From the IMG/VR virus record IMGVR_UViG_3300042889_001503, positions 62,001 through 126,000 of that record: DNA of 64,000 nucleotides. One strand, given 5' to 3'. The position numbers and the translations under genes are program-made. Shown here in pieces: positions 20,473 to 50,693 of this stretch (the stretch's first letter is position 1; each line of letters starts with the position of its first letter). The notes under the pieces were generated by a model that had not been told where the DNA came from, did not search any database, and saw nothing but the letters and a program-made list of their open reading frames with translations.

Positions 20473-23262
20473 ATGATAACACAAGAAGAAATTAAGGCAT
20501 TCCTTGAAGGGAATGACCCCGAAGAGCACATAGTTGCGATTGAATATGATTACGTATCAGATTCAGTCTACAAAATTAAAGAAATCCCGAGTCAGGGAAA
20601 AATAATCAAAAAAGATACATTTACGGCATTTGCTTGGGTTGGAGACTTGAGAGATTTGAACTTTTATTCAAAATCTAAAGACTTACAAAAAGATGCGATG
20701 AAAAAACACGGAATCATCATTGATAAGTTAGAAACCAAAGGTAATGAGAGATTAGAAAAGGGTCTCAAATATATGGTTAAATCAATGAAGGGTTATCGTT
20801 CACTCATCCAATTCTTTAAAGAGGGTGGTGTAGACCCGTGGGGTGAAAAGACAAAAGGAAAATTAACAGTTCTCCCACCGGTAGAACAATATTTAATTTC
20901 AAGAGAGAAAAGACTATTCAAAGGGTATGAAGAATACAATGACATCACCCGACTCGGATTTGACTTGGAGACGACTGCTCTTGAACCTAAAGACGGTCGT
21001 ATATTTATGATTGGAATCAAAACCAATAAAGGATACCAAAAAGTTATTGAATGTGCGGATGAGGACCAAGAACGAAGAGGATTAGTTGAGTTCTTCAACA
21101 TTATCGATGAACTTAAACCATCAATCATTGGTGGATACAATTCAGCAAACTTTGACTGGTTTTGGATATTTGAGAGATGCAAAGCACTTAACTTGGACAT
21201 CAAAAAAATCGCTAAATCACTAAACCCGGCAAGACCCATATCTCAAAAAGACGGTATGTTAAAACTTGCCAACGAGGTAGAGAGATTCTCACAAACTCAA
21301 TTGTGGGGTTATAATATTATTGATATTATCCACTCAGTTCGTAGAGCACAAGCAATCAATTCAAGTATTAAATCCGCAGGACTTAAATACATTACTCAAT
21401 ACATTAAAGCTGAAGCCCCCGACCGAGTTTATATTGACCACTTAGAAATTGGACCGATGTATGCCAAAAAGGAGGAATATTGGTTAAATGTTGAGAATGG
21501 GAAATATAAAAGAGCCGATAATCCGGACTTTAATAATTTAGATACAAGATTCCCGGGGAAATACTTAAAGGTTACCGGAGATAATATTGTGGAGAGATAT
21601 CTTGACGATGACTTAGAGGAAACGTTGACAGTGGATGATGAATTCAACCAAGGAACGTTTCTATTAGCATCAATGGTACCAACAACATACGAGAGAGTTT
21701 CCACAATGGGAACCGCAACTCTATGGAGAATGATTATGTTGGCTTGGTCTTACAAGAACAAATTAGCTATTCCAGCAAAAGAAGAGAAGACAGACTTCGT
21801 AGGAGGACTTTCAAGACTACTTAAGGTGGGTTACTCTACCAACGTATTAAAACTCGATTACTCTTCCCTATATCCGTCTATTCAATTGGTTCACGACGTG
21901 TTCCCTGAGTGTGATGTTATGGGTGGGATGAAAGGGATGTTAACTTATTTCCGTAATGCTCGTATTATGTATAAAAACTTGGCGTCGGAGTATAAATCAA
22001 TTGATTCTAAAAAATCACTTTCATACGATAGAAAACAATTACCATTAAAAATCTTTATTAACTCGATGTTTGGTGGATTATCAGCACCACACGTTTATGA
22101 GTGGGGGGAAATGAATAGTGGTGAAAGAATTACCTGCACCGGAAGACAATATCTTCGTCAAATGGTAAAATACTTTGTTAAACGAGGATACACACCTTTG
22201 GTACTTGATACGGATGGTGTTAACTTTAGTTTACCGGATGAGGGTGTTGATGATAGAGTTTATATTGGTAAAGGACTAAATTGGTTAGTTAAAGAGGGTA
22301 AAGAATACAGAGGATATTACGCCGACACCGCAGAATACAATGATTTGTTTATGAAAGGTGAGATGGGGTTAGATTGTGATGGAACTTGGGATTCTTGTAT
22401 TAACTTGAGTAGAAAGAACTACGCAACAATGGAATCTAATGGTAAAATTAAATTAACCGGGAACTCAATTAAATCTAAGAAATTACCACTATACATTGAG
22501 GTGTTTTTAGATAAAGGTGTGAAATTGTTATTAGAAGGAAAAGGACAAGAATTCGTTGAGTGGTATTTTGAGTATCACCAAAGAATATACAACCAACAAA
22601 TCCCATTAAAACAAATCGCTCAAAGAGCGAGAGTTAAACTATCTGTTGAAGATTATAAAAAGAGATGTGGTCAGAAAACAAAGGCGGGTTCATTGATGAG
22701 TAGAATGGCTCATATGGAATTGGCTATCAAACACGACTTAAAAGTTTCATTGGGAGATGTTATTAGCTATGTCAATAATGGTTTAAAAGCGTCACACGGA
22801 GATGTTCAAAAAATCACAAAAAACAATTACACTAAAAAAGAATTGGATTTATTTACATCAGTTAATGGTATGGAACCTGAAGATAAGTCTACCTCAACAA
22901 TACAACTTAATTGTTATATGTTGGACCAAACCGAAATTGAGAATAACCCTGACTTAACCGGAGATTATAATGTTGCAAGAGCAATCTCAACATTTAATAA
23001 AAAAGTGGAACCATTATTAATTGTTTTTAATAAGGAGTTAAGAGAAAGTTTATTAATTGCTAACCCTGAAGATAGAGGGTTTTTTACTAAGACTCAATGT
23101 GAGTTGGTTGGAGGTATACCAAATAAAGAAGGGGACCAAGATACGATTGAGGATTTATTAACAATAACTGATTTGGAATTAAAGTTTTGGGATAGAGTTG
23201 GTGTTAGTTCTGAATACATTTATGAATTGGCAGAACCAGGTTGGGAAGAACATATTAATTAA
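20473..23262 (+). CDS. polB: Family B DNA polymerase with 3'-5' exonuclease
   Basis: FDLETT (ExoI), GYNSANFD (ExoII), YLDDD (ExoIII), DYSSLYPSI (motif A), KIFINSMFG (B), LDTDG (C), RKNYA. Confidence 0.95.
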   Translation: MITQEEIKAFLEGNDPEEHIVAIEYDYVSDSVYKIKEIPSQGKIIKKDTFTAFAWVGDLRDLNFYSKSKDLQKDAMKKHGIIIDKLETKGNERLEKGLKYMVKSMKGYRSLIQFFKEGGVDPWGEKTKGKLTVLPPVEQYLISREKRLFKGYEEYNDITRLGFDLETTALEPKDGRIFMIGIKTNKGYQKVIECADEDQERRGLVEFFNIIDELKPSIIGGYNSANFDWFWIFERCKALNLDIKKIAKSLNPARPISQKDGMLKLANEVERFSQTQLWGYNIIDIIHSVRRAQAINSSIKSAGLKYITQYIKAEAPDRVYIDHLEIGPMYAKKEEYWLNVENGKYKRADNPDFNNLDTRFPGKYLKVTGDNIVERYLDDDLEETLTVDDEFNQGTFLLASMVPTTYERVSTMGTATLWRMIMLAWSYKNKLAIPAKEEKTDFVGGLSRLLKVGYSTNVLKLDYSSLYPSIQLVHDVFPECDVMGGMKGMLTYFRNARIMYKNLASEYKSIDSKKSLSYDRKQLPLKIFINSMFGGLSAPHVYEWGEMNSGERITCTGRQYLRQMVKYFVKRGYTPLVLDTDGVNFSLPDEGVDDRVYIGKGLNWLVKEGKEYRGYYADTAEYNDLFMKGEMGLDCDGTWDSCINLSRKNYATMESNGKIKLTGNSIKSKKLPLYIEVFLDKGVKLLLEGKGQEFVEWYFEYHQRIYNQQIPLKQIAQRARVKLSVEDYKKRCGQKTKAGSLMSRMAHMELAIKHDLKVSLGDVISYVNNGLKASHGDVQKITKNNYTKKELDLFTSVNGMEPEDKSTSTIQLNCYMLDQTEIENNPDLTGDYNVARAISTFNKKVEPLLIVFNKELRESLLIANPEDRGFFTKTQCELVGGIPNKEGDQDTIEDLLTITDLELKFWDRVGVSSEYIYELAEPGWEEHIN

Positions 23263-25714: not shown

Positions 25715-27520
25715 TTAACCCCGGTTGTTTATTTTATTCATAAGTTCTCCGATAAAATCTCCACTTTCAGAGATATTGTCCCCCATCACGGTTCCAATGT
25801 TTTGTTTCTTTTGATTTACCATATCGTAAATAATTCCTTCAATTGAGTTATCAAATATTGGGTAGTAAACTGATACCGAATTTTTTTGTCCGTATCTGTA
25901 TGCTCTGTCTTCTGCTTGAGCTAAGTCACCCGGAACAAATGATAAGTCATTAATGATTACTGCTTCAGCGGCGGTTAATGTGATACCTACACCGGCAGCT
26001 TTTACGTTACCAACAAAGACTTTAATCTTTTCATTATCTTGGAATTGGTCAACAGCATATTGTCGTTGAGGTTTTGATGTTGAACCATCTAATCTAACCG
26101 CTTGTTTTCCAAAATGGTCGGCAATTCTGTTTAATGTTTCAGTAAAGTTGGTAAAGATAATAACTTTTTTGTCTTGTTCCAAAATATTTTCAGCTAATTC
26201 TATAGTATCTTTTATTTTTTCTTCAGCAATTACCTGACGAACTTTCATTAACTTACTGAATTGAACCGTCAAAGATGTTGACTCATCGGGATTCTTATTA
26301 TACCAATCATAGTATTCCCCCATCAACCCTTCATAAAGTTTTGACTTTAATCTTAGATAAACCGGTGTAATAATTTTCTCAGGTAAATCTAACACTTCCG
26401 TTTTCAACCTACGTAAAACTTGTCTTGAGGTTCTGTCTCTTAATTCTTCCAAATTGGATGCTCCGGTTACATTCCATATTTTACGAGTTCCTGCGGTGAA
26501 TTGGTAACCTTGACAATATCTAATAGCGTAAGCCATCCAATTCTGAGCCACCGGACTCTCAATAAGAGCCAATAAGTTAAAATAATTCATTGGACGGTTA
26601 GTCATCGGTGTCCCGGTTAATAACCACACTCTTTCACAACTTTTAGAAAAACTATTAACAAGTTTGGTTCTTGCGGCTTGTCCATTACTCACATAATGAG
26701 CCTCATCCAAAATAATTAAATCAAAATTTCCTTGTGTTATTAAAGATTCTGATTTACCTTTCAAATCGTAGAAGTTTTTAAGAATATCGTAATTTACAAT
26801 AACAAAATCGTGTTCTATTGAAAAATTCTTACCTTCAGAGATATAAACACTTCTATCGGTATAGTTCTCAATTTCTCTTTGCCAGTTAATTTTAAGAGAT
26901 GCCGGACAAACAATTAATATTTTCTTTGCACCCGTCTCTAAAGCGGCGATAATGGTTGCGGTGGTTTTACCTAATCCCATATCATCGGCAAGAATAAACC
27001 TTTTAGAACCGGCAAGTTTTTCGATAGCTTCTTTTTGATGTTCTAATGGTGGACGATTAGAGTATTTTGAATAATCTACCACAATATTCTTAATTGTGTG
27101 TGTTTTAATCAAAGCACCTTTAGGTAACCAAAAATCGTGGATTGTTTCAGATTCTAAAACTTTTCCCCAAACGTGGTAGGATTTTTCTTTCTCAACTAAT
27201 AGCTTTTCCACCCATACCTGTTCGGGGATTTTAAGTAATAATTTTTCATCAGCAATTTTTTTGGCAAAGTAGGGGTCTAAATCAACCCATCTTTTGGCTA
27301 CCTTTGGTGTTACTTCGTTAAAATTTATTATGTAGTCAGATTGTGCCCGAGTCGGGAAGAATCTTTTGTTAGTTTCCTTTTGGAATTTTAATTTTAGGAT
27401 ATAGTTATTTGCCCCCTGATAAGTTTCAAGGATAGATATCGCTCGTTGTTCTATTGTTAAATTAGAATTTTCAGATGTATTGTTTTCCAAATTTAATCTT
27501 TTAGTAGAAATATAACACAT
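25715..27520 (-). CDS. SNF2-family helicase/ATPase (SMARCAL1/ZRANB3-like)
   Basis: LADDMGLGKT, VCPASLKINW, ILDEAH, LTGTPM.NRP, GVGITLT, QAEDRAYRYGQ. The true start may be the in-frame TTG at 27490. Confidence 0.92.
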   Translation of the reverse strand: MCYISTKRLNLENNTSENSNLTIEQRAISILETYQGANNYILKLKFQKETNKRFFPTRAQSDYIINFNEVTPKVAKRWVDLDPYFAKKIADEKLLLKIPEQVWVEKLLVEKEKSYHVWGKVLESETIHDFWLPKGALIKTHTIKNIVVDYSKYSNRPPLEHQKEAIEKLAGSKRFILADDMGLGKTTATIIAALETGAKKILIVCPASLKINWQREIENYTDRSVYISEGKNFSIEHDFVIVNYDILKNFYDLKGKSESLITQGNFDLIILDEAHYVSNGQAARTKLVNSFSKSCERVWLLTGTPMTNRPMNYFNLLALIESPVAQNWMAYAIRYCQGYQFTAGTRKIWNVTGASNLEELRDRTSRQVLRRLKTEVLDLPEKIITPVYLRLKSKLYEGLMGEYYDWYNKNPDESTSLTVQFSKLMKVRQVIAEEKIKDTIELAENILEQDKKVIIFTNFTETLNRIADHFGKQAVRLDGSTSKPQRQYAVDQFQDNEKIKVFVGNVKAAGVGITLTAAEAVIINDLSFVPGDLAQAEDRAYRYGQKNSVSVYYPIFDNSIEGIIYDMVNQKKQNIGTVMGDNISESGDFIGELMNKINNRG

Positions 27521-27538
27521 TTTATAATATTTATCAAT

Positions 27539-27856
27539 ATGAACAACAAACCAATAAATCTTGACCGGGATACAAAGTTAATTAGACGATATCTAAATAT
27601 ATCAAAACCTGAAGGGGTCTCAAAGATTGCGTTTGAAATAACTCCCGTAGGAGATGAGAGCGAATATTATATGAAAATAACTTATGTTGTTCCTGATGAT
27701 AGTAAATATTTGAAAGCTAACGACAAAAATTTAATTCCTGTTCGTTACAGAGACGAATGGAATCATCATATAACAAAAGATTTAAAAGATTATTTTGGAT
27801 TAAAAGTGTATATCAACCAATCCGGAACAAGAAACGAAAATTTTTATAATAGATAA
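27539..27856 (+). CDS. Hypothetical protein
   Basis: 105-aa ORF preceded by a TATTTAT motif. Confidence 0.55.
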   Translation: MNNKPINLDRDTKLIRRYLNISKPEGVSKIAFEITPVGDESEYYMKITYVVPDDSKYLKANDKNLIPVRYRDEWNHHITKDLKDYFGLKVYINQSGTRNENFYNR

Positions 27857-27863
27857 AAACAAT

Positions 27864-28376
27864 ATGGATAATAAAGTACCAATTACAAGGATAGGTAAGT
27901 TCTTTGGAGCGGAGGATTTCAAGTTAGAACAAGACTTTGGGACCGAATGGTTACACGGGGATATGAACTTTACATTAGTTCTATATCGTGTTGATAGATA
28001 TAAGACCAAAACGGACGATGTTTATGGTGAGACGGTATCTGACGGTATCAAATTTTTACCACCGGTGGAGTTCAAAGGATATGTTCAAATTATGGCCCCT
28101 GAGAACAAATATTTAGGTAATTCTAAAATTGACCAAATGGAGCCGGGTAATATGAAAGTATCTGTTTATCAAAGAGATTTGGATGAGTTAGAGGTGGAGA
28201 TTAGTTATGGTGATTATATCGGATACTACGAAACAGAAGACAAAGTAAGATATTACACGGTTAATAATGATGGAAGGGTTACTTCTGACAACAAACATAC
28301 TTTGGGTGGATACAAACCATTCTATAGAACAATTATGGCGTCACCGGTTACAAATAACGAATTTAGAGGGTTATAA
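27864..28376 (+). CDS. Head-closure/neck protein (T4 gp14-like)
   Basis: LYRVDRYKTKTDDVYGE..F.PPVE and L.ELEVEISYGDYI motifs. Lies upstream of the tail terminator and sheath genes. Confidence 0.65.
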   Translation: MDNKVPITRIGKFFGAEDFKLEQDFGTEWLHGDMNFTLVLYRVDRYKTKTDDVYGETVSDGIKFLPPVEFKGYVQIMAPENKYLGNSKIDQMEPGNMKVSVYQRDLDELEVEISYGDYIGYYETEDKVRYYTVNNDGRVTSDNKHTLGGYKPFYRTIMASPVTNNEFRGL

Positions 28377-28777
28377 TGAAAGTATTAATAACAGAAAATA
28401 AATTATTTGATTCAATATATTCATATATCGAAGGAGATTTTAATAAAGACGATATTCATTGGACTTATGGTATGGATGACGGTGAGGATGGTGATTTAGT
28501 TGATTATAATGAAAATGAAAACTTATTAATTTTCTATAATGGAGATTGGGAAGGTGAAGAAGATAGTGATGTTATTTTTTATTATTTAGAAGTAGAATAT
28601 TATAGTGACGAACCATCAGCTAAACCATTTAAAGATGATGCACCAACATTAGATGTAACAGGTGAATATTCCGAACATTTAGACTCTATGTTTGGTAACC
28701 ATTGGAAGGGACCAATGAAAAAATGGTTTCAAGATAATTTTAATTTACCCGTTAAAACGGTAACAACATATTACTAA
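28376..28777 (+). CDS. Acidic hypothetical protein with MKVLITE leader
   Basis: 133 aa, D/E-rich, leader identical to that of the next gene. Confidence 0.6.
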   Translation: MKVLITENKLFDSIYSYIEGDFNKDDIHWTYGMDDGEDGDLVDYNENENLLIFYNGDWEGEEDSDVIFYYLEVEYYSDEPSAKPFKDDAPTLDVTGEYSEHLDSMFGNHWKGPMKKWFQDNFNLPVKTVTTYY

Positions 28778-28779
28778 TA

Positions 28780-29226
28780 ATGAAAGTATTAATAACAGAA
28801 TCACAAGCAAACAGAATCTTTGAAGATGTTTCAAATGATGAAGAAAAGGATTACATCGGTAAAAAAGTTATGATTTATTATAATCTACATAAACACACTT
28901 TTTCAATAATATATAAAGGTTTAGTTGTTAATCATTCTGATTACGTCAAACTAAGTGATGTTGAGTTTAGAGTTAGACCGGGAGGAAGAGAAAAGGTAAT
29001 AAAAGAGAAAAGAAAGAATGTTCATTCATTTGTGATTGGAACATTGATGGATTATTGTAAATATCCTTGTGAAAACCTACCAACCGAACCAAATAGTAAT
29101 ATTGTGACTTACAACCCATACAAATACAACTCTTACGTTATGAAAGACACCGAAGAACCTATATATAGAGCCGGTGAGGTAGAAATGATAAATTCAAGAA
29201 ACAAAATATTTATAACAAAACAATAA
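28780..29226 (+). CDS. Conserved phage hypothetical protein with MKVLITESQ leader
   Basis: YYNLHK..FS, V.L.DVEF.V..GGREKV..EKRKNVHSFV.G and YNPY pattern, recalled from other phage hypothetical proteins (not verified). Confidence 0.65.
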   Translation: MKVLITESQANRIFEDVSNDEEKDYIGKKVMIYYNLHKHTFSIIYKGLVVNHSDYVKLSDVEFRVRPGGREKVIKEKRKNVHSFVIGTLMDYCKYPCENLPTEPNSNIVTYNPYKYNSYVMKDTEEPIYRAGEVEMINSRNKIFITKQ

Positions 29227-29227
29227 A

Positions 29228-30262
29228 ATGGGTTTACCAAGTAAAATAAAGAAAAATATACCACTAACGGAGTCCAAAACTCTTTTACCAAGAAGAGAAG
29301 AACTTTTGGATAAAATCAATAAAGACGGAACTTATCTTCCAAAATCTTTATTGCATGCCGATTTAGATAGAGGTTTTTTAGATTTTGTTAGAGATGATTT
29401 AAAAGTGGTGGTTGAGGGTAAAACAATACCAACCGTTGATATTATTGTTACCACACAAAATTGGGCTCAGTTTACTGAAACTTGGAATTTCCAAAATATT
29501 GATAAAAACACGGAACCTCCTTTTATTACAACAATTAGAATCCCGGAGGTTAAATTTGGGACTAACCCGGCTCTTATGTATAATATTCCAAATAGAAGAC
29601 AATATTTTTACGCTCAAGTACCTACTTGGGATGGACAAAGAAATGGGATGGATGTTTATACAATACCTCAACCCGTTCCGGTTGATATAACATATTCTGT
29701 TAAAATTATTTGTAACAGAATGAGAGAGTTAAATAAACTTAATCAGGTTATTTTAGAAAAATTTGCATCAAGACAAGCCTATGCGGTAATCAAAGGACAT
29801 TACATTCCAATTGTTATGGGTGCGATTACTGATGAATCTGTTGTTGATGTTGAGAAAAGAAAATACTACATACAAAGTTATGAATTTACAATGTTAGGGT
29901 TTTTAATTGATGAAGATGAGTTTGAAGTTTCCCCGGCAATAACAAGAGTTTTACAAGTTGTTGAAATAGAAAAAAAAACAACTAAGCGTGGTCGGAAACA
30001 AAATGACGAAACCGGTCTTGGTAGTCAAGCATTGTTTGTTGTTGGTAATAATACGTTAACACAATTGTTTAGTTACATTGTTGATATTAAAATTGGTGAA
30101 ACAATAAATGTTGAATCATTTGATGTGTATATCAATGATGATTACTATGGTTCTGATTTAGAGTTAATACAAATTAACTCCGGAGACGTATTAAGGTTAA
30201 ATATTGTTAAGAAAGATGACTCATTAGAATCAACAATTCAATTTATTGATAAGATACTTTAG
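29228..30262 (+). CDS. Tail terminator/sheath stabiliser (T4 gp15-like)
   Basis: PQPVPVDITYSVKI...M.ELN.L..ILE.F and Y.QSYEFTMLGFL motifs. Lies just before the sheath gene. Confidence 0.65.
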   Translation: MGLPSKIKKNIPLTESKTLLPRREELLDKINKDGTYLPKSLLHADLDRGFLDFVRDDLKVVVEGKTIPTVDIIVTTQNWAQFTETWNFQNIDKNTEPPFITTIRIPEVKFGTNPALMYNIPNRRQYFYAQVPTWDGQRNGMDVYTIPQPVPVDITYSVKIICNRMRELNKLNQVILEKFASRQAYAVIKGHYIPIVMGAITDESVVDVEKRKYYIQSYEFTMLGFLIDEDEFEVSPAITRVLQVVEIEKKTTKRGRKQNDETGLGSQALFVVGNNTLTQLFSYIVDIKIGETINVESFDVYINDDYYGSDLELIQINSGDVLRLNIVKKDDSLESTIQFIDKIL

Positions 30263-30423
30263 TCTTCCCCATAGATATCTTTAGTCGGTTTACATTTTTC
30301 AATAATAAGTCTTTCTAAGAACCGATACATTTTAATACCTTTCTTTTCACAGTAAGTTTTAAGAATCTCGTGTGTCTCCACCGATATCTTTAAATTTTTA
30401 ATCTTTTTGATGTCTTTATCCAT
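30259..30423 (-). CDS. 54-aa ribbon-helix-helix-like DNA-binding protein (absent from the ORF track)
   Basis: Manual translation MDKDIKKIKNLKISVETHEILKTYCEKKGIKMYRFLERLIIEKCKPTKDIYGED. Has its own TATTTAT motif at 30460-30466 on the minus strand. Confidence 0.7.
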   Translation of the reverse strand: MDKDIKKIKNLKISVETHEILKTYCEKKGIKMYRFLERLIIEKCKPTKDIYGED

Positions 30424-30540
30424 AAGTAGAAAAAAGGTAGAAAATAATCTCCCTAAAATATAAATAGTTGCTACGAAGTAAAGTATTTTGATTTTTTTTT
30501 AATATTTATATATAAATAAAATTATAAACAAAACAAACTA

Positions 30541-33500
30541 ATGGCAACAAACAGCAAAGTATTCGTATCTCCCGGGGTATATACTTCCGAAGTTGATTTA
30601 AGTTTCGTAGCACAAAGTGTGGGGGTAACCACATTAGGTATTGTTGGTGAAACACAAAAAGGACCAGCATTCGAACCTATCTTTATACGAAATTTCGATG
30701 AATTCTCAACTTTTTTTGGAGGAACATCCCCTGAAAAGTTTATTAATACACAAATACCGAAGTATGAAGCTTCGTATATCGCAAAATCTTATTTACAACA
30801 ATCAAATCAATTGTTTGTTACAAGAATTTTGGGATTGTCAGGATATGACGCGGGACCATCTTGGTCTTTTAGAACGATAGCGAATGTTGATAAAACAACA
30901 GTTGATTTTGACTGTTCAGGTAGTACATATGATTTTACATCATGTGAATCTATATGTACAGGATATACGGAATATTCATTCACATTACCGTTTACCGGAT
31001 GTAATAATGATATAAGTTCAGTTGTCTTTGGTGCATTTACAGGTGATGAATCGATAATAACAAATAAATTTAATGAAACTTATGAAAATTTTAACGGAAC
31101 ATCGTCAACAATAATTTCAGATTTCCAACAACAAGTTTTCAATGTTATTGTTTCCTCAACAACTTTATCAACTTCAGCAACCTCATTATACTGTTATGGT
31201 ACAATATTAGGTGATGATTACGATAATTTAGTTTCAATAGGTTATACAAACGTAACAAACGTATTCGACGTAAACAATGTTGATTCACATTTAGCTGATT
31301 ATACTGCTCCAGAGAATGACCCTTGGTATTACGCATTATTTGATAATAATAATGGTAGTTATACAGGTAGTTCTTACTATACGGTAATCGATACTCTTGG
31401 ACAAAGTTCTACATCATCAAATTGTTCATCTTTCTATTCATTTAGTGTTCTTGGTGTTGCAGGAAGTATTAATTACAATAACAGCACAATTAGTGTTGTT
31501 TTACCTTTTGCGACTTTTTCAGGAACAAATTTATCAACTATTGTTCCAACGTTTAGTGCTTGTTGTACAGGTGTAACGGTAAATTTATCAGCACAAACTA
31601 GTAATGTATCGGTTGTTAATTTTTCAACAGGTGCTGTTACATATCTTTTAATACCTAACGATGGTAGTTCAACAGGAACATCTTTTAACGTAACCGTTGA
31701 AATACAAAATCCTTGTAACCCACTAACATCAGGTAATACTGGAAACTATACTTCAGGTTCAATTAAAACTTGTTATACGGGTAGTGTTAGAGGTTCTGTT
31801 TATGTTTATACAGGAACATCTTATACAGACTTTGACGATTTAATTCTTGCAACACTTCGTTCAAGAGGTATTGCGACTTATGGTGCGGGTAGTGATGGAC
31901 CAACTTATCAAGTAAATGATGTGACCGATGTAACAATGAATTGTACAGGTGGATACTCAAGTATTGGTAAAAATCCTTATTCTGAATTTGGTTTAAACAT
32001 AACTGATAAGGATAATAATACATTTTTCTTTGAAACCTCATTTAGTGAGTCAGATTCTAAATATTTACCAAAAGTATTTGGTTCTTCAAACTTTGCAAAA
32101 CCAAGAACTACGGTTCCATTATTTGTAGAAGAGAGATTTCAAACATTATTAAACTATGGTTATAATAAAGGTTATATTAGAGGTATTAATTGTAATTTAG
32201 TTGGATTACCAAGAGCTAATAACAGTAATAACGATATGTCTTCGATAGCGTTTTATTTAGAAAAATACCAAACACCGTCTTCCCCTTGGGTTGTATCTGA
32301 ATTAAGAGGTAGTAAAGTATACAATCTATTCAGATTCACAACAGTTTCTGATGGTGATGACGCTAACACTGAGGTTAAAATTTCAATAGCAAATATGTCA
32401 TTTGGTAATTTAACTTTTGATATTTTAGTTAGAGATTTTTATGACACAGATAATAATCCTGTTGTTATTGAGAAATTCACAAATTGTTCGATGAATCCTC
32501 AGGATAATGCGTTTGTTGGACAAAAAATTGGTACTGCCGATGGAGAATACGCGTTGAACTCAAAATACATTATGGTTGAGATGAATGAGGACGCACCGAT
32601 TGATGCGTTACCTTGTGGTTTCCAAGGATTTAGATTTAGAAATTACGCAACTTCTAGACCACCGTTCCCAATTTATAAAACTAAATATGATTACCCTGGA
32701 GAGGTTGTATTTGACCCACCATTTGGATTAAGTTCAGGTTCTAACTTGGCAATCCAAAGTCCGGGCGATAATGTTCGTAGAACTTACTTAGGTATTTCTA
32801 CAGGATATGGTGCAGGATATGACCCTGATTTCTTCCAATATAAAGGTAAACAATTACCATTAGATTTATGTACAGCTGTGGAAGGGAATGATTGGACATA
32901 TAAAACAAGAGGATTCCATATGGATGTTAACGCATCATCAATTGTTTATCCGGGAACATCTAACCCAGAATTCTTTGTTGGTGACGCACCATTTACATCA
33001 GACCCTGATAGTGAAGTTAGTCCTTATTACAGAATTTATTCACGTAAATTCTCATTATTAGTTCAAGGAGGATTTGATGGTTGGGATATCTATAGAGAAT
33101 CTAGAACAAATACCGACACATTTAAATTAGGTAGAAGAGGTTACTTAAACGGGGCTTGTACAAGTATACAATATCCAACGGCAACAGGATGGGGAGCATT
33201 CAAGAAAATTACTGTTGGAAAAAATAATGTTGATTGGGCAAACACCGATTATTACGCTTACTTATTAGGACAACAAACATTCTCTAATCCTGAGGCGGTG
33301 AATATTAACTTATTTGTTACTCCGGGTATTGATTATGTTAATAATTCTGATTTAGTTGAAGATGCGATTGAGATGATTGAATTTAACAGAGCTGACTCAT
33401 TATACGTTTGTACAACACCGGATATTGATTTGTTTATGCCAACAGTAAACTTGGCAACTGATTTAATTTACCCTCAAGAGGCAATAAATAACTTAGAAAC

Positions 33501-34134
33501 TACAGGAGTCGACTCTAACTATACCGCAACATACTACCCTTGGGTATTAACAAGAGATAGTGTTAACAATACACAAATCTACTTACCACCAACGGCAGAA
33601 GTTGTTAGAAACTTAGCGTTAACCGACAACATCGCTTTCCCTTGGTTCGCGGCGGCAGGTTACACAAGAGGTATCGTAAACGCAATCAAAGCGAGAAAGA
33701 AACTTACTCAAGAAGATAGAGACACCCTTTACCAAGGACGTATCAATCCAATTGCAACTTTCTCTGATGTTGGGACGGTAATTTGGGGTAATAAAACACT
33801 ACAAGTGGCTCAATCGGCACTTGATAGAATAAACGTAAGAAGATTATTACTTCAAGCTCGTAAATTGATTTCAGCGGTATCTGTAAGATTATTGTTTGAA
33901 CAAAACGACCAAAAAGTAAGACAAGACTTCTTAGACGCGGTTAACCCTATCTTGGATGCTATCAGAAGAGACAGAGGTTTATATGATTTCCGAGTTACAG
34001 TATCGTCAGATACGGCTGATTTAGATAGAAATCAAATGACAGGTAAGATTTACATCAAACCAACCAAATCGTTAGAATTTATAGACATTACGTTCTATAT
34101 TACTCCAACAGGAGCTTCTTTCGAGAATATATAA
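30541..34134 (+). CDS. Contractile tail sheath protein with large insertion
   Basis: VSPGVYTSEVDLS, GETQKGPAFEP, YYPW, PWFAAAGYTRG, LYQGRINPI, WGNKTLQ, LDRINVRRLL, IKPTKSLEFIDITF. Confidence 0.95.
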   Translation: MATNSKVFVSPGVYTSEVDLSFVAQSVGVTTLGIVGETQKGPAFEPIFIRNFDEFSTFFGGTSPEKFINTQIPKYEASYIAKSYLQQSNQLFVTRILGLSGYDAGPSWSFRTIANVDKTTVDFDCSGSTYDFTSCESICTGYTEYSFTLPFTGCNNDISSVVFGAFTGDESIITNKFNETYENFNGTSSTIISDFQQQVFNVIVSSTTLSTSATSLYCYGTILGDDYDNLVSIGYTNVTNVFDVNNVDSHLADYTAPENDPWYYALFDNNNGSYTGSSYYTVIDTLGQSSTSSNCSSFYSFSVLGVAGSINYNNSTISVVLPFATFSGTNLSTIVPTFSACCTGVTVNLSAQTSNVSVVNFSTGAVTYLLIPNDGSSTGTSFNVTVEIQNPCNPLTSGNTGNYTSGSIKTCYTGSVRGSVYVYTGTSYTDFDDLILATLRSRGIATYGAGSDGPTYQVNDVTDVTMNCTGGYSSIGKNPYSEFGLNITDKDNNTFFFETSFSESDSKYLPKVFGSSNFAKPRTTVPLFVEERFQTLLNYGYNKGYIRGINCNLVGLPRANNSNNDMSSIAFYLEKYQTPSSPWVVSELRGSKVYNLFRFTTVSDGDDANTEVKISIANMSFGNLTFDILVRDFYDTDNNPVVIEKFTNCSMNPQDNAFVGQKIGTADGEYALNSKYIMVEMNEDAPIDALPCGFQGFRFRNYATSRPPFPIYKTKYDYPGEVVFDPPFGLSSGSNLAIQSPGDNVRRTYLGISTGYGAGYDPDFFQYKGKQLPLDLCTAVEGNDWTYKTRGFHMDVNASSIVYPGTSNPEFFVGDAPFTSDPDSEVSPYYRIYSRKFSLLVQGGFDGWDIYRESRTNTDTFKLGRRGYLNGACTSIQYPTATGWGAFKKITVGKNNVDWANTDYYAYLLGQQTFSNPEAVNINLFVTPGIDYVNNSDLVEDAIEMIEFNRADSLYVCTTPDIDLFMPTVNLATDLIYPQEAINNLETTGVDSNYTATYYPWVLTRDSVNNTQIYLPPTAEVVRNLALTDNIAFPWFAAAGYTRGIVNAIKARKKLTQEDRDTLYQGRINPIATFSDVGTVIWGNKTLQVAQSALDRINVRRLLLQARKLISAVSVRLLFEQNDQKVRQDFLDAVNPILDAIRRDRGLYDFRVTVSSDTADLDRNQMTGKIYIKPTKSLEFIDITFYITPTGASFENI

Positions 34135-34191: not shown

Positions 34192-35010
34192 ATGTTAAAA
34201 AATAGAATAAAAGAAGGTATTGACGAGTTTGGTGCCCCCGATGAAAAGTATTACGCGTTTGATTGGGATGATAACATTGTTTCAATGCCAACAAAGATAA
34301 TCTTGAAAGATGAAGAAGGTGACGAAGTAGGAATGTCTACTGAAGATTTTGCAACTTACAGAGAAGAAGTTGGAAAAGAACCTTTAGAATTTGATGGTCA
34401 CACAATCGTAGGGTTTGCAAACGACCCTTTTAGATGGTTTGGTGTAAAGGGTGATAAACAATTTATTGTTGATGCGATAACCGCAAAACCGGGTCCGGCT
34501 TGGGATGATTTTGTTGAGGCAATTAATAACGGTTCAATTTTTTCAATTGTTACCGCTAGAGGACACACACCTTCAATATTAAAAGAGGCTTGTTACAATT
34601 ATATTGTGTCAAATACAAATGGGATTGATTCAGACGAATTGGTTAAAAATTTAGAAAAATATCGTGATTTAGCGGATGAAGAAAATGTCTCTAAAAGAGA
34701 AATGATTCGAGAATATTTAGACTTGTGTAGATTTTATCCGGTAAGTTACGGTGAGGGTTCTGCAACAAATCCGGAACAAGGTAAAATTAACGCATTAAAA
34801 GAGTTTGTTCAATATGTTAAGGCGATGTCTCAACATATACAAAAGAAAGCTTTCTTAAAAAATAAAATAAATAATTATTTTGTCCCTAAGATAGGTTTTT
34901 CAGATGACGACTTAAAAAATGTGGATGTAGTGAAAAAACATTTTGAGCAAGACCCAGAGAATATAATTAAAACATATTCAACAGCAGGAGGAATTAAAAA
35001 AGAATATTAA
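34192..35010 (+). CDS. HAD-superfamily phosphatase-like protein
   Basis: YYAFDWDDNI (motif I), IVTARGH (II), K..AL (III), IGFSDDD..N (IV). Confidence 0.75.
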   Translation: MLKNRIKEGIDEFGAPDEKYYAFDWDDNIVSMPTKIILKDEEGDEVGMSTEDFATYREEVGKEPLEFDGHTIVGFANDPFRWFGVKGDKQFIVDAITAKPGPAWDDFVEAINNGSIFSIVTARGHTPSILKEACYNYIVSNTNGIDSDELVKNLEKYRDLADEENVSKREMIREYLDLCRFYPVSYGEGSATNPEQGKINALKEFVQYVKAMSQHIQKKAFLKNKINNYFVPKIGFSDDDLKNVDVVKKHFEQDPENIIKTYSTAGGIKKEY

Positions 35011-38453: not shown

Positions 38454-38492
38454 AATAGATTATTAATCTATTTATTATAAAAGAAAAAAAAT

Positions 38493-50648: not shown

Positions 50649-50693
50649 ATTAAATTTTTCTTAACTAACAGATATTTATATATAAAAAAGATT

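What the first reader, a model, noticed from the sequence alone, without database searches (positions are those of the whole stretch)
28373..28800. Identical 24-bp start cassette (MKVLITE) on two unrelated adjacent genes, a putative capsid-targeting leader
Seen: ataatgaaagtattaataacagaa at 28373-28396 and 28777-28800, with unrelated sequence afterwards. Similar (I/L)-x-E leaders occur at 34192 (RIKE), 50694 (LLE), 50920 (ILEE, IVE) and 24791. Known: T4 internal proteins carry a short N-terminal capsid-targeting sequence cleaved by gp21 after (I/L)-x-E. Inference: a portable leader that loads diverse cargo into the head for injection. The direct repeats could also allow precise gain or loss of the 404-bp unit between them.
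Basis: partly seen in the sequence, partly recalled or inferred. Interest (0 to 1): 0.6.

Follow-up and report, generated by a model that had tools for sequence, protein, structure and literature searches.

The report
Shared start tag on phage genes
Two neighbouring, unrelated genes of an uncultured lake-water giant phage start with the same seven codons, and about 25 to 34 genes of the phage share this start tag; it looks most like the short address label that phage T4 uses to load proteins into its head and then cuts off, but this has not been shown experimentally.

Summary
The 24-base repeat is real: 28373-28396 and 28777-28800, with 0.01 matches expected by chance. It forms the first seven codons (MKVLITE) of two unrelated genes. 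A (133 aa) has a confident predicted fold with no known relative. B (148 aa) belongs to the L5 gp82 family.

The repeat is part of a genome-wide pattern. The 272-kb T4-like genome has 24 genes that start M-[KR]-h-h-I-[TK]-E, and about 34 under a looser rule. With the first 18 residues removed, almost none of these proteins resemble each other. Three complete relatives carry 13-17 such starts each.

The genome encodes a T4 gp21-type prohead protease. T4's injected Alt protein starts MELITE and is cut by gp21 after ITE-6.

In relatives, the slot holding A and B contains one to four tagged cassettes. Some have A only, some B only (the junction lies exactly at the tag), and some carry an untagged B. 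Neighbouring tags evolve in concert.

Best reading (about 0.45): a protease-cleaved head-targeting tag that also serves as a recombination joint. Packaging and cleavage are untested.

The parts
28373..28396 (+). Copy 1 of the exact 24-base repeat. It spans the stop/start overlap of the upstream gene and codons 1-7 (MKVLITE) of gene A.
28777..28800 (+). Copy 2 of the exact 24-base repeat. It spans the last base of A's stop codon, 2 spacer bases, and codons 1-7 (MKVLITE) of gene B.
28376..28777 (+). Gene A, 133 aa, very acidic (pI 4.1), with the K-type tag (MKVLITENK…). The AF2 model has pLDDT 87.5: residues 1-6 are extended coil and helix 7-21 is part of a compact alpha/beta fold. It has no Pfam, PHROG or PDB match. 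Paralogues lie at genome 219016 and 244641.
28780..29226 (+). Gene B, 148 aa. A Q-type tag module (about residues 1-18) is followed by a linker and then an L5 gp82-like beta core (Pfam PF25735, residues 27-139, E 1.7e-30; phrog_586).
28780..28824 (+). Residues 1-15 of B. This is a free-standing tag with two (I/L)-x-E motifs: I-T-E at 5-7 and I-F-E at 13-15. The second Glu is kept in 24 of 25 tagged B orthologues.
27864..28376 (+). Conserved left flank of the cassette slot (170 aa; 90-97% identical in close relatives). Function unknown. A language-model lead points to neck or head-tail joining proteins, but HMMs do not confirm it.
29228..30262 (+). Conserved right flank of the slot (344 aa). 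There is a weak language-model lead to the T4 gp15 sheath stabiliser, not confirmed by HMM. Residues 11-17 carry an internal tag-like stretch (IPLTESK).
27528..27534 (+). TATTTAT box 4 bases before the ATG of the first gene of the operon (105-aa ORF 27539-27856). It looks like a promoter that would give a leaderless start.
29207..29213 (+). TATTTAT box inside the 3' end of B, 14 bases before the ATG of the 344-aa gene.
30541..34134 (+). Tail sheath gene (1197 aa; phrog_23, E 5e-54, matching the C-terminal 290 residues). It shows that the slot lies just upstream of tail genes.

Best explanation
The shared start is a short, portable N-terminal tag. It consists of M-K, three hydrophobic residues ending in Ile5, a variable residue 6, an invariant Glu7, and then the start of an amphipathic helix. 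This clade of T4-like jumbo phages places it on many otherwise unrelated small accessory proteins.

The most likely function is that of the T4 capsid-targeting propeptides. The tag would bring the protein into the assembling prohead, and the gp21-family prohead protease would then cut after I-x-E. In the Q-type version a second cut is likely after the (I/L)-x-E at residues 13-16. The cargo would stay in the head and enter the host with the DNA.

At the DNA level, the same 21-50 bases at gene starts act as short homology patches. Neighbouring cassettes exchange their 5' ends through them (gene conversion), and whole cassettes are gained, lost or duplicated.

Shown here: the repeat, its genome-wide and clade-wide recurrence, its portability, selection at the protein level, the presence of the protease, and the cassette turnover with concerted evolution. 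Inferred: packaging, cleavage and injection.
For: 1. Recurrence.
- 21 of 341 crude genes start with the strict tag at their first ATG; adding three whose tagged ATG has an in-frame ATG upstream gives the 24 strict-tag genes. The same pattern occurs internally only 4 times in the proteome.
- Three complete relatives have 13-17 strict starts each. The reversed-pattern control gives 0.

2. Portability.
- With 18 residues removed, 34 tag-type proteins collapse into only one family of 3-4 and one pair; 29 are singletons.
- Cargo domains include L5 gp82, DUF5872, a peptidoglycan-binding domain and HExxH proteins.
- gp82 homologues in 895 other phage records align only from about residue 17-29 of B onward in nearly all listed rows, so the homology does not include the seven-codon tag.
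- B orthologues occur untagged, and also with a 30-aa Cys-rich insert after the tag.
- In AF2 models the first 6 residues are coil in both proteins. In B the tag helix is separated from the core by a low-confidence linker.

3. Protein-level selection.
- Ile5 and Glu7 are 22/22 in the aligned set, while their codons vary roughly as in the rest of the genome.
- Ser8 uses both AGY and TCN codon boxes.
- Residue 6 varies (T/K/N/S/L/P) across orthologues, while position 5 stays I/V and Glu7 is kept.

4. Protease context.
- The genome has a PF03420 protease (E 5e-25) and a gp23-type MCP (E 2e-65).
- The MCP N-terminal arm holds LLE, IKE, LYE and INE sites.

5. Precedent in T4.
- T4 Alt and its duplicate alt.-1 start MELITELFD.
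- Alt is packaged and injected, and it loses 6 residues at ITE-6 (PMC5694885).
- T4 internal proteins share only a CTS (PMC3012670).

6. Control. The same N-terminal recurrence screen run on T4 recovers ipI, ipII and ipIII.

7. Second motif. Eight of 11 Q-type tags have a further [ILVM]xE at residues 13-16, against a 12.5% background (p = 7e-6).

8. Turnover.
- 56 distinct versions of the slot hold 1-4 cassettes.
- L125 lacks A, with the junction in the tag.
- Cassettes are 50-75% identical where the flanks are 90-97%.
- The 5' 54 bases match the neighbouring copy (53/54 and 51/54), but differ between orthologues that are 95% identical elsewhere (46/54).
Against: - There are no virion, cleavage or expression-timing data.
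- The phage is uncultured, and no cultured phage has an A homologue.
- The tag has no sequence similarity to the T4 internal-protein CTS. It resembles only Alt's hexapeptide, and whether that hexapeptide is itself the targeting signal is an open question in the literature.
- In A-type proteins the helix that follows Glu7 is an integral part of the fold (pLDDT 96). I-T-E-S-Q-h also reads as an ordinary helix N-cap with a hydrophobic staple, so local conservation could be structural.
- A bare [IL]xE is common: 17.5% of the other genes have one near the start.
- An HNH endonuclease next to the MCP gene also starts MKKILLE.
- Tagging roughly 10% of all genes would be a very large cargo set.
- The complex prediction with the protease could not be run.
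Confidence: 0.45

Rival explanations
1. The tag is a shared recognition or assembly module unrelated to the head. For example, it could dock onto a common phage or host partner (chaperone, protease as a degradation timer, polymerase), or act as a strand-plus-helix oligomerisation element. It would not be cleaved.
For: - In A the helix after Glu7 is part of the fold, and residues 14 and 17 are conserved core positions.
- The conserved stretch continues about 9 residues past the proposed cut: hydrophobic at 10, 13 and 14.
- Looser relatives of the motif (…LTESDL…, …ITEEEK…) sit 3-6 residues further from the N-terminus.
- Nothing shows cleavage.
Against: - No candidate partner is known.
- It does not explain why the invariant positions are exactly the P3 and P1 positions of the T4 protease motif with a free P2, nor the second (I/L)xE in Q-type tags.
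- It does not explain why the tag is always at the extreme N-terminus.
- The untagged B variants show that the core does not need the tag to fold.
Confidence: 0.25
2. The repeat is mainly a DNA-level recombination joint. It would be a gene-start analogue of the PeSL cassettes of T4-type phages, and the encoded peptide would merely be tolerated.
For: - Gene conversion of the 5' ends between neighbouring cassettes.
- The indel junction lies in the tag.
- Several tagged genes in the 180-246 kb region sit directly behind a G-rich hairpin, a T run and a TATTTAT box, forming a composite like a PeSL (PMC2839356).
- De Bruijn contigs from lake metagenomes break at the tag and join to paralogues there.
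Against: - The amino acids are conserved while the codons vary. The Ser8 codon-box switch and the retention of I-x-E in orthologues only 50-60% identical both point to selection on the peptide.
- Exact DNA identity is limited to some sublineages; elsewhere it is 14-16 of 21 bases.
- A and B have no intergenic space and no promoter or terminator between them.
- This reading is compatible with the best explanation as a secondary role.
Confidence: 0.12
3. The conserved first codons are a translation-start device: an A/U-rich, unstructured downstream region for leaderless or Shine-Dalgarno-less mRNAs.
For: - About 28 genes have a TATTTAT box only 3-6 bases (mostly 4) before the ATG, which would give leaderless mRNAs. 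About a third of these carry the tag.
- Few genes show a Shine-Dalgarno sequence.
- AAA as codon 2 and A/T-rich codons are typical of strong starts.
Against: - More than half of the tagged genes, including A and B, are internal to operons with stop/start overlap and have no adjacent box.
- Most box-adjacent genes lack the tag.
- An RNA-level constraint would not hold Ile5, Thr6 and Glu7 constant through synonymous changes.
Confidence: 0.08

Closest known systems
N-terminal propeptide of phage T4 Alt (ADP-ribosyltransferase packaged in the head and injected)
   Same: Both are extreme N-terminal short peptides ending L-I-T-E followed by L-F-D-like residues: T4 has MELITE|LFDE, gene A has MKVLITE|NKLFD. 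In T4 it is removed by the gp21 protease at ITE-6. T4 also has a duplicated copy next door (alt.-1) with the same start.
   Different: The tag here is 7 residues rather than 6, with Lys2 and more hydrophobic residues. It is used by about 25-34 genes rather than one gene plus a fragment. Its processing and packaging are not shown. Alt is 682 aa, whereas the cargo here is mostly 64-190 aa.
Capsid targeting sequence (CTS) of T4 internal proteins IPI, IPII and IPIII, and the polymorphic internal-protein loci of T-even phages
   Same: One conserved short N-terminal leader sits on otherwise diverse small proteins. It ends in (L/I)-x-E and is cut by gp21. The cargo is thought to be fast-evolving host-interaction proteins. 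The leader is detectable by the same recurrence screen.
   Different: There is no sequence similarity to MKTYQEFIAE beyond M-K and the Glu. The T4 CTS is 10-19 residues and lies wholly upstream of the cut. Here conservation runs past Glu7, unless the second site at residues 13-16 is the final cut.
PeSL mobile regulatory cassettes of T4-type phages (RB49/phi1; PMC2839356, PMC4122927)
   Same: Short conserved elements at gene boundaries in variable regions act as homology patches for insertion, deletion and replacement of small accessory genes. Hairpin-plus-promoter composites are seen in front of several tagged genes.
   Different: PeSLs are intergenic, with sigma-70-type -35/-10 promoters. Here the shared element is coding and under protein-level selection, the A/B pair has no intergenic space, and no -35 consensus is visible.
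Propeptides of ejection proteins in giant phages SPN3US and phiKZ
   Same: Many head-internal proteins are processed by a gp21-related protease at x-x-E motifs. The diverged paralogues gp53 and gp54 keep identical first 15 residues, which contain cleavage motifs.
   Different: Their motif is A-x-E or S/A/G-x-E, and most propeptides are over 100 residues. They belong to a different phage lineage. The phage studied here has a T4-type gp23 capsid protein.
Mycobacteriophage L5 gp82 family (Pfam PF25735)
   Same: The core of gene B (residues 27-139) matches with E 1.7e-30.
   Different: In nearly all listed homologues in mycobacteriophages, Bacillus phages and others the match does not reach the seven-codon tag, starting at about residue 17-29 of B. 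The family's function is unknown.

Membership tests
T4-type capsid-targeting / gp21-cleaved N-terminal propeptide | The phage encodes a gp21-family (Peptidase S77) prohead protease together with T4-type head genes | tested here: met
   PF03420 hit at genome 28476-29201 (E 5.4e-25). PF07068 gp23 hit (E 2.1e-65). The portal, scaffold-like and protease genes lie in T4 order.
T4-type capsid-targeting / gp21-cleaved N-terminal propeptide | A short peptide at the extreme N-terminus ending in (L/I)-x-E | tested here: met
   I-T-E at residues 5-7 in A and B. Ile5 and Glu7 are 22/22 in the genome set. Residue 6 varies among orthologues.
T4-type capsid-targeting / gp21-cleaved N-terminal propeptide | The same leader on proteins that are otherwise unrelated | tested here: met
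   BLASTP of A against B finds nothing beyond residue 17. 29 of 34 proteins are singletons after trimming. The Pfam and PHROG domains differ.
T4-type capsid-targeting / gp21-cleaved N-terminal propeptide | Sequence similarity to a leader known to be processed in T4 | tested here: inconclusive
   The tag resembles Alt's MELITE|LFD but not the internal-protein CTS. Six or seven residues are too few for a statistical test.
T4-type capsid-targeting / gp21-cleaved N-terminal propeptide | The leader is removed by the prohead protease | not testable with these tools
   This needs N-terminal proteomics or an in vitro cleavage assay.
T4-type capsid-targeting / gp21-cleaved N-terminal propeptide | The protein is present inside the prohead or virion, and the leader is sufficient to target a foreign protein | not testable with these tools
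   The phage is uncultured and known only from lake-water metagenomes.
PeSL-type mobile regulatory cassette | An intergenic composite of a stem-loop terminator and a sigma-70-like -35/-10 promoter | tested here: not met
   The A/B pair has no intergenic space. The TATTTAT boxes elsewhere have no conserved -35. Hairpin-plus-box composites do precede some tagged genes.
PeSL-type mobile regulatory cassette | Indels and replacements between relatives are bounded by the repeated element | tested here: met
   The L125 junction lies in the tag. There are 1-4 cassettes per slot. The 5' ends show gene conversion.
Pfam PF25735 Phage_L5_gp82 (gene B only) | Profile match above the curated cut-off | tested here: met
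   105.8 bits against a cut-off of 27, covering residues 27-139.

The most novel reading that the evidence does not exclude
An abundant clade of freshwater jumbo phages runs an integron-like system for injected proteins. One 7-15-residue tag would serve both as the head-loading and cleavage signal for roughly a tenth of the phage's genes, and as the DNA joint through which these cargo genes are converted, duplicated and moved between a slot next to the tail genes and the variable regions of the genome.
Probability: 0.3. Interest if true: 0.75.

Novelty: new variant of a known kind. Interest (0 to 1): 0.6.

Why it matters
If the tag is a head-loading signal, a simple sequence rule would identify the whole set of proteins that this widespread, uncultured lake phage clade injects with its DNA. 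These are probably anti-defence and host-takeover factors, most of them with no known fold. The finding would extend the T4 CTS principle to a distant lineage in a far larger form. It would link protein targeting and gene shuffling through one short element. It would also offer a very short natural tag for loading foreign proteins into large capsids. And it makes the cargo question testable by searching lake viral metaproteomes for peptides that begin at residue 8 or about 16.

Tried and rejected
- Foldseek against PDB and VIA wide (best Z 3.7) gave no fold relative for A.
- Pfam and PHROGs gave nothing for A, the 170-aa and 344-aa flanks, or most head-module neighbours.
- The language-model leads for the flanks (neck protein; gp15 sheath stabiliser) were not confirmed by PF11649 or PF16724 searches of the genome. 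The controls for those searches also found nothing, so this is uninformative.
- The 409-aa protein after the head module is not a gp24-type paralogue of the MCP. It shares only a 14-residue stretch with it.
- tblastn of A against 50,697 phage records found no match. Flavobacterium phage immuto, a cultured relative by MCP, has no tag starts.
- Lake metagenome contigs laid on 27500-30500 (3001 letters, within the operators' limit) showed no clean joint removing the 404-base unit. They showed only contig breaks and cross-joins to paralogues at the tag. No usable RNA run was found.
- Charge and pI of the tagged proteins do not differ from the rest of the genome.
- TATTTAT is not over-represented in the window as a whole (56 observed against 52 expected). 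Only its position before start codons is striking.
- Signal peptide reading: rejected by inspection only. There are three to four hydrophobic residues followed by charged ones.

Full report
**Observation.** The 24-base string occurs exactly twice in the window, at 28373-28396 and 28777-28800. Allowing three mismatches finds no further copy. Shuffles give 0.01 expected matches. Each copy supplies the ATG and six codons (MKVLITE) of an ORF: A (28376-28777, 133 aa) and B (28780-29226, 148 aa). A overlaps the stop codon of the upstream 170-aa gene by one base. B starts two bases after A's stop codon. The three genes are therefore read as one tightly coupled unit.

**The two genes are unrelated.**
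- BLASTP aligns only residues 1-17 (E 0.013).
- A has no Pfam or PHROG hit. B has an L5 gp82 core (PF25735, residues 27-139, E 1.7e-30).
- The AF2 model of A (38-sequence alignment) has pLDDT 87.5. Residues 1-6 are coil, and helix 7-21 is part of a compact alpha/beta domain. It has no PDB relative.
- The model of B is weaker (pLDDT 61). It shows coil 1-6, a low-confidence helix 7-15, a linker, and then a beta core.
- gp82 homologues in 895 other phage records align to B only from about residue 17-29 onward in nearly all listed rows, so the tag is an add-on.

**Genome context.** The window is bases 62001-126000 of a 272-kb virus record with 32% G+C, estimated 91% complete. The genome encodes:
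- a T4 gp21-family prohead protease (PF03420, E 5e-25) and a gp23-type capsid protein (E 2e-65);
- a tail sheath 1.3 kb downstream of B.

The closest cultured relatives by capsid protein are only about 40% identical: Microcystis phage Mel-JY01 and Flavobacterium phage immuto. Near-identical DNA occurs in at least 18 lake-water metagenome runs.

**The tag is genome-wide.**
- 21 of 341 crude genes start M-[KR]-h-h-I-[TK]-E at their first ATG, against 4 internal occurrences of the pattern.
- Including genes whose tagged ATG has an in-frame ATG upstream, there are 24 strict starts. Including looser forms (…LTESDL…, …ITEEEK…) gives about 34.
- Nearly all lie at 180-268 kb among small genes.
- Three complete relatives of 308-322 kb have 13-17 strict starts each, with 0 for the reversed control pattern. 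Phage immuto has none.
A bare [IL]xE near the start is found in 17.5% of the other genes.

**Portability.** With the first 18 residues removed, the 34 proteins form only the A family (3-4 members) and one pair. The other 29 are singletons. Cargo includes gp82-like, DUF5872, peptidoglycan-binding and HExxH proteins.

Two subtypes appear:
- K-type (…ITE[NS]K…, 13 genes): found on small A-like proteins, where the following helix is part of the fold.
- Q-type (…ITExQ…, 11 genes, including B): found on unrelated cargo. Eight of the 11 have a second [ILVM]xE at residues 13-16, against a 12.5% background (p = 7e-6). In B orthologues this second Glu is kept in 24 of 25 tagged sequences.

**Selection acts on the peptide.** Ile5 and Glu7 are invariant in the 22-gene set, yet their codons vary roughly as in the rest of the genome. 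Ser8 uses both AGY and TCN codons. Among B orthologues residue 6 is T, K, N or L, while position 5 stays I or V and Glu7 is kept. This is the pattern expected for a P3-x-P1 protease motif. It is also compatible with a helix N-cap.

**The slot in relatives.** More than 100 IMG/VR loci carry the flanking 170-aa and 344-aa genes. There are 56 distinct versions of the slot, holding one to four cassettes:
- A only (L017);
- B only (L125);
- A plus B;
- a 101-aa K-type gene plus B;
- two or three A-type copies plus B;
- A plus a 200-aa gene;
- B without any tag (130 aa; L025, L031, L043);
- B with a 30-residue Cys-rich insert behind the tag.

Nearly every cassette starts with the tag. In close relatives the flanks are 90-97% identical and the cassettes 50-75%.

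**Concerted evolution.** In this genome, and in a second sublineage, all tags in the slot are identical over 21 bases. The two sublineages differ from each other at codon 3 (GTA versus ATA). Other lineages show 14-16 of 21 identical bases. In L053 and L058 the first 54 bases of the two A-type copies match within each genome (53/54 and 51/54). Yet orthologous copies that are 95% identical elsewhere differ at 8 of these 54 bases. This indicates gene conversion of the 5' ends.

**Comparison with T4.**
- The literature states that T4 internal proteins share only a CTS that loads them into the scaffolding core (PMC3012670).
- gp21 removes 10-20-residue propeptides from the internal proteins, and six residues from Alt at ITE-6 (PMC5694885).
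- In the T4 record, Alt and the adjacent duplicate alt.-1 both start MELITELFD. This is close to MKVLITENKLFD of gene A.
- As a control, the same N-terminal recurrence screen on T4 returns two groups: ipI, ipII, ipIII plus gp61.1, and one family with an intrinsic N-terminal domain motif (the latter identified by eye as GIY-YIG-like, not tested). Recurrent starts can therefore mean either a CTS or a paralogous family. The trimmed-sequence test places the present case with the CTS type.
- The MCP N-terminal arm has four (L/I)-x-E sites. Alignment to mature gp23 places the expected cut near LYE-51 or INE-60.
- A 409-aa HExxH protein starts with an 11-residue peptide ending IKE. It then repeats the MCP sequence that follows INE.

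**Expression context (inference).** TATTTAT is the most enriched 7-mer in the 45 bases before gene starts (14-fold). Its spacing from the ATG peaks sharply at 4 bases and at 14-18 bases. No -35 consensus accompanies it. It precedes head and tail genes as well as many tagged genes, and it is rare in the 40-60 kb and 130-160 kb blocks. This fits a late-type promoter lacking a -35 element. However, the motif is not over-represented in the window as a whole, and no timing data exist.

**Verdict.** The head-targeting and cleavage reading is the best-supported mechanism (0.45) but remains an inference. The role of the tag as a recombination joint is directly supported by comparative data. Rivals are a non-capsid recognition module (0.25), a purely DNA-level joint (0.12) and a translation-start device (0.08).

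Noticed in passing
Genome-wide; in the window for example at 27528-27534, 29207-29213, 30503-30509, 38469-38475 and 50673-50679: A TATTTAT box lies before about 80 gene starts, in two sharp spacing classes: 4 bases before the ATG (which would give leaderless mRNAs) and 14-18 bases with an A-rich spacer. No -35 consensus is visible. Several boxes follow a G-rich hairpin plus a T run, which resembles PeSL cassettes.
   Followed up: partly
window 30541-34134: The tail sheath protein is 1197 aa. Only the last ~290 residues match sheath profiles. The middle ~800 residues are a Ser/Thr/Asn-rich insertion of unknown role.
   Followed up: no
genome 35526-36755 (outside the window; L232:11526-12752): A 409-aa protein with an HExxH motif starts with an 11-residue peptide ending IKE. 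It then repeats 10 of 14 residues of the capsid protein sequence that follows INE-60. It may be a second substrate of the prohead protease.
   Followed up: partly
genome 33104-33784 (L232:9104-9781): An HNH/endonuclease VII-like gene sits directly after the major capsid gene. It is probably a homing endonuclease. It starts MKKILLE, a look-alike of the tag on a protein unlikely to be cargo.
   Followed up: partly
L021:4407-4937, L036:4395-4928, L104:3860-4390 and others: Some B orthologues carry a 30-residue insert with two Cys pairs (zinc-ribbon-like) exactly between the tag helix and the gp82-like core. Others lack the tag altogether.
   Followed up: partly
genome 194278, 214109, 218423; 224070, 224618; 2402, 220853, 222571: Other recurrent N-terminal helix motifs exist on small genes: MKELIRQILRE-type, MNLNENIHRIHQ (twice, identical), and …EEKNRILNLH or …RIKQIM types. 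The tag may be one of several start modules in this genome.
   Followed up: no
genome 186580-186933 and 255872-256636 (L233:16580-16933, L004:872-1636): Two proteins with looser tag forms look cell-wall directed. One has a PG_binding_1 domain (E 3.7e-9). The other resembles a lysozyme by eye but has no Pfam hit.
   Followed up: partly
window 29258-29278 (residues 11-17 of the 344-aa flank gene): An internal tag-like stretch (IPLTESK) sits near the N-terminus of the conserved gene just downstream of the slot.
   Followed up: no
T4 record NC_000866, 18966-19130 (L246): The T4 hypothetical protein gp61.1 (54 aa) starts MKTFKEFIKE, close to the CTS of ipI, ipII and ipIII. I do not know whether it is a known head protein.
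   Followed up: no
window 20473-23262 and 25715-27520 (minus strand): A DNA polymerase gene and an SNF2-type helicase gene lie between blocks of large structural genes and directly beside the operon holding the slot. Replication and virion genes are therefore interleaved here, unlike in T4.
   Followed up: no
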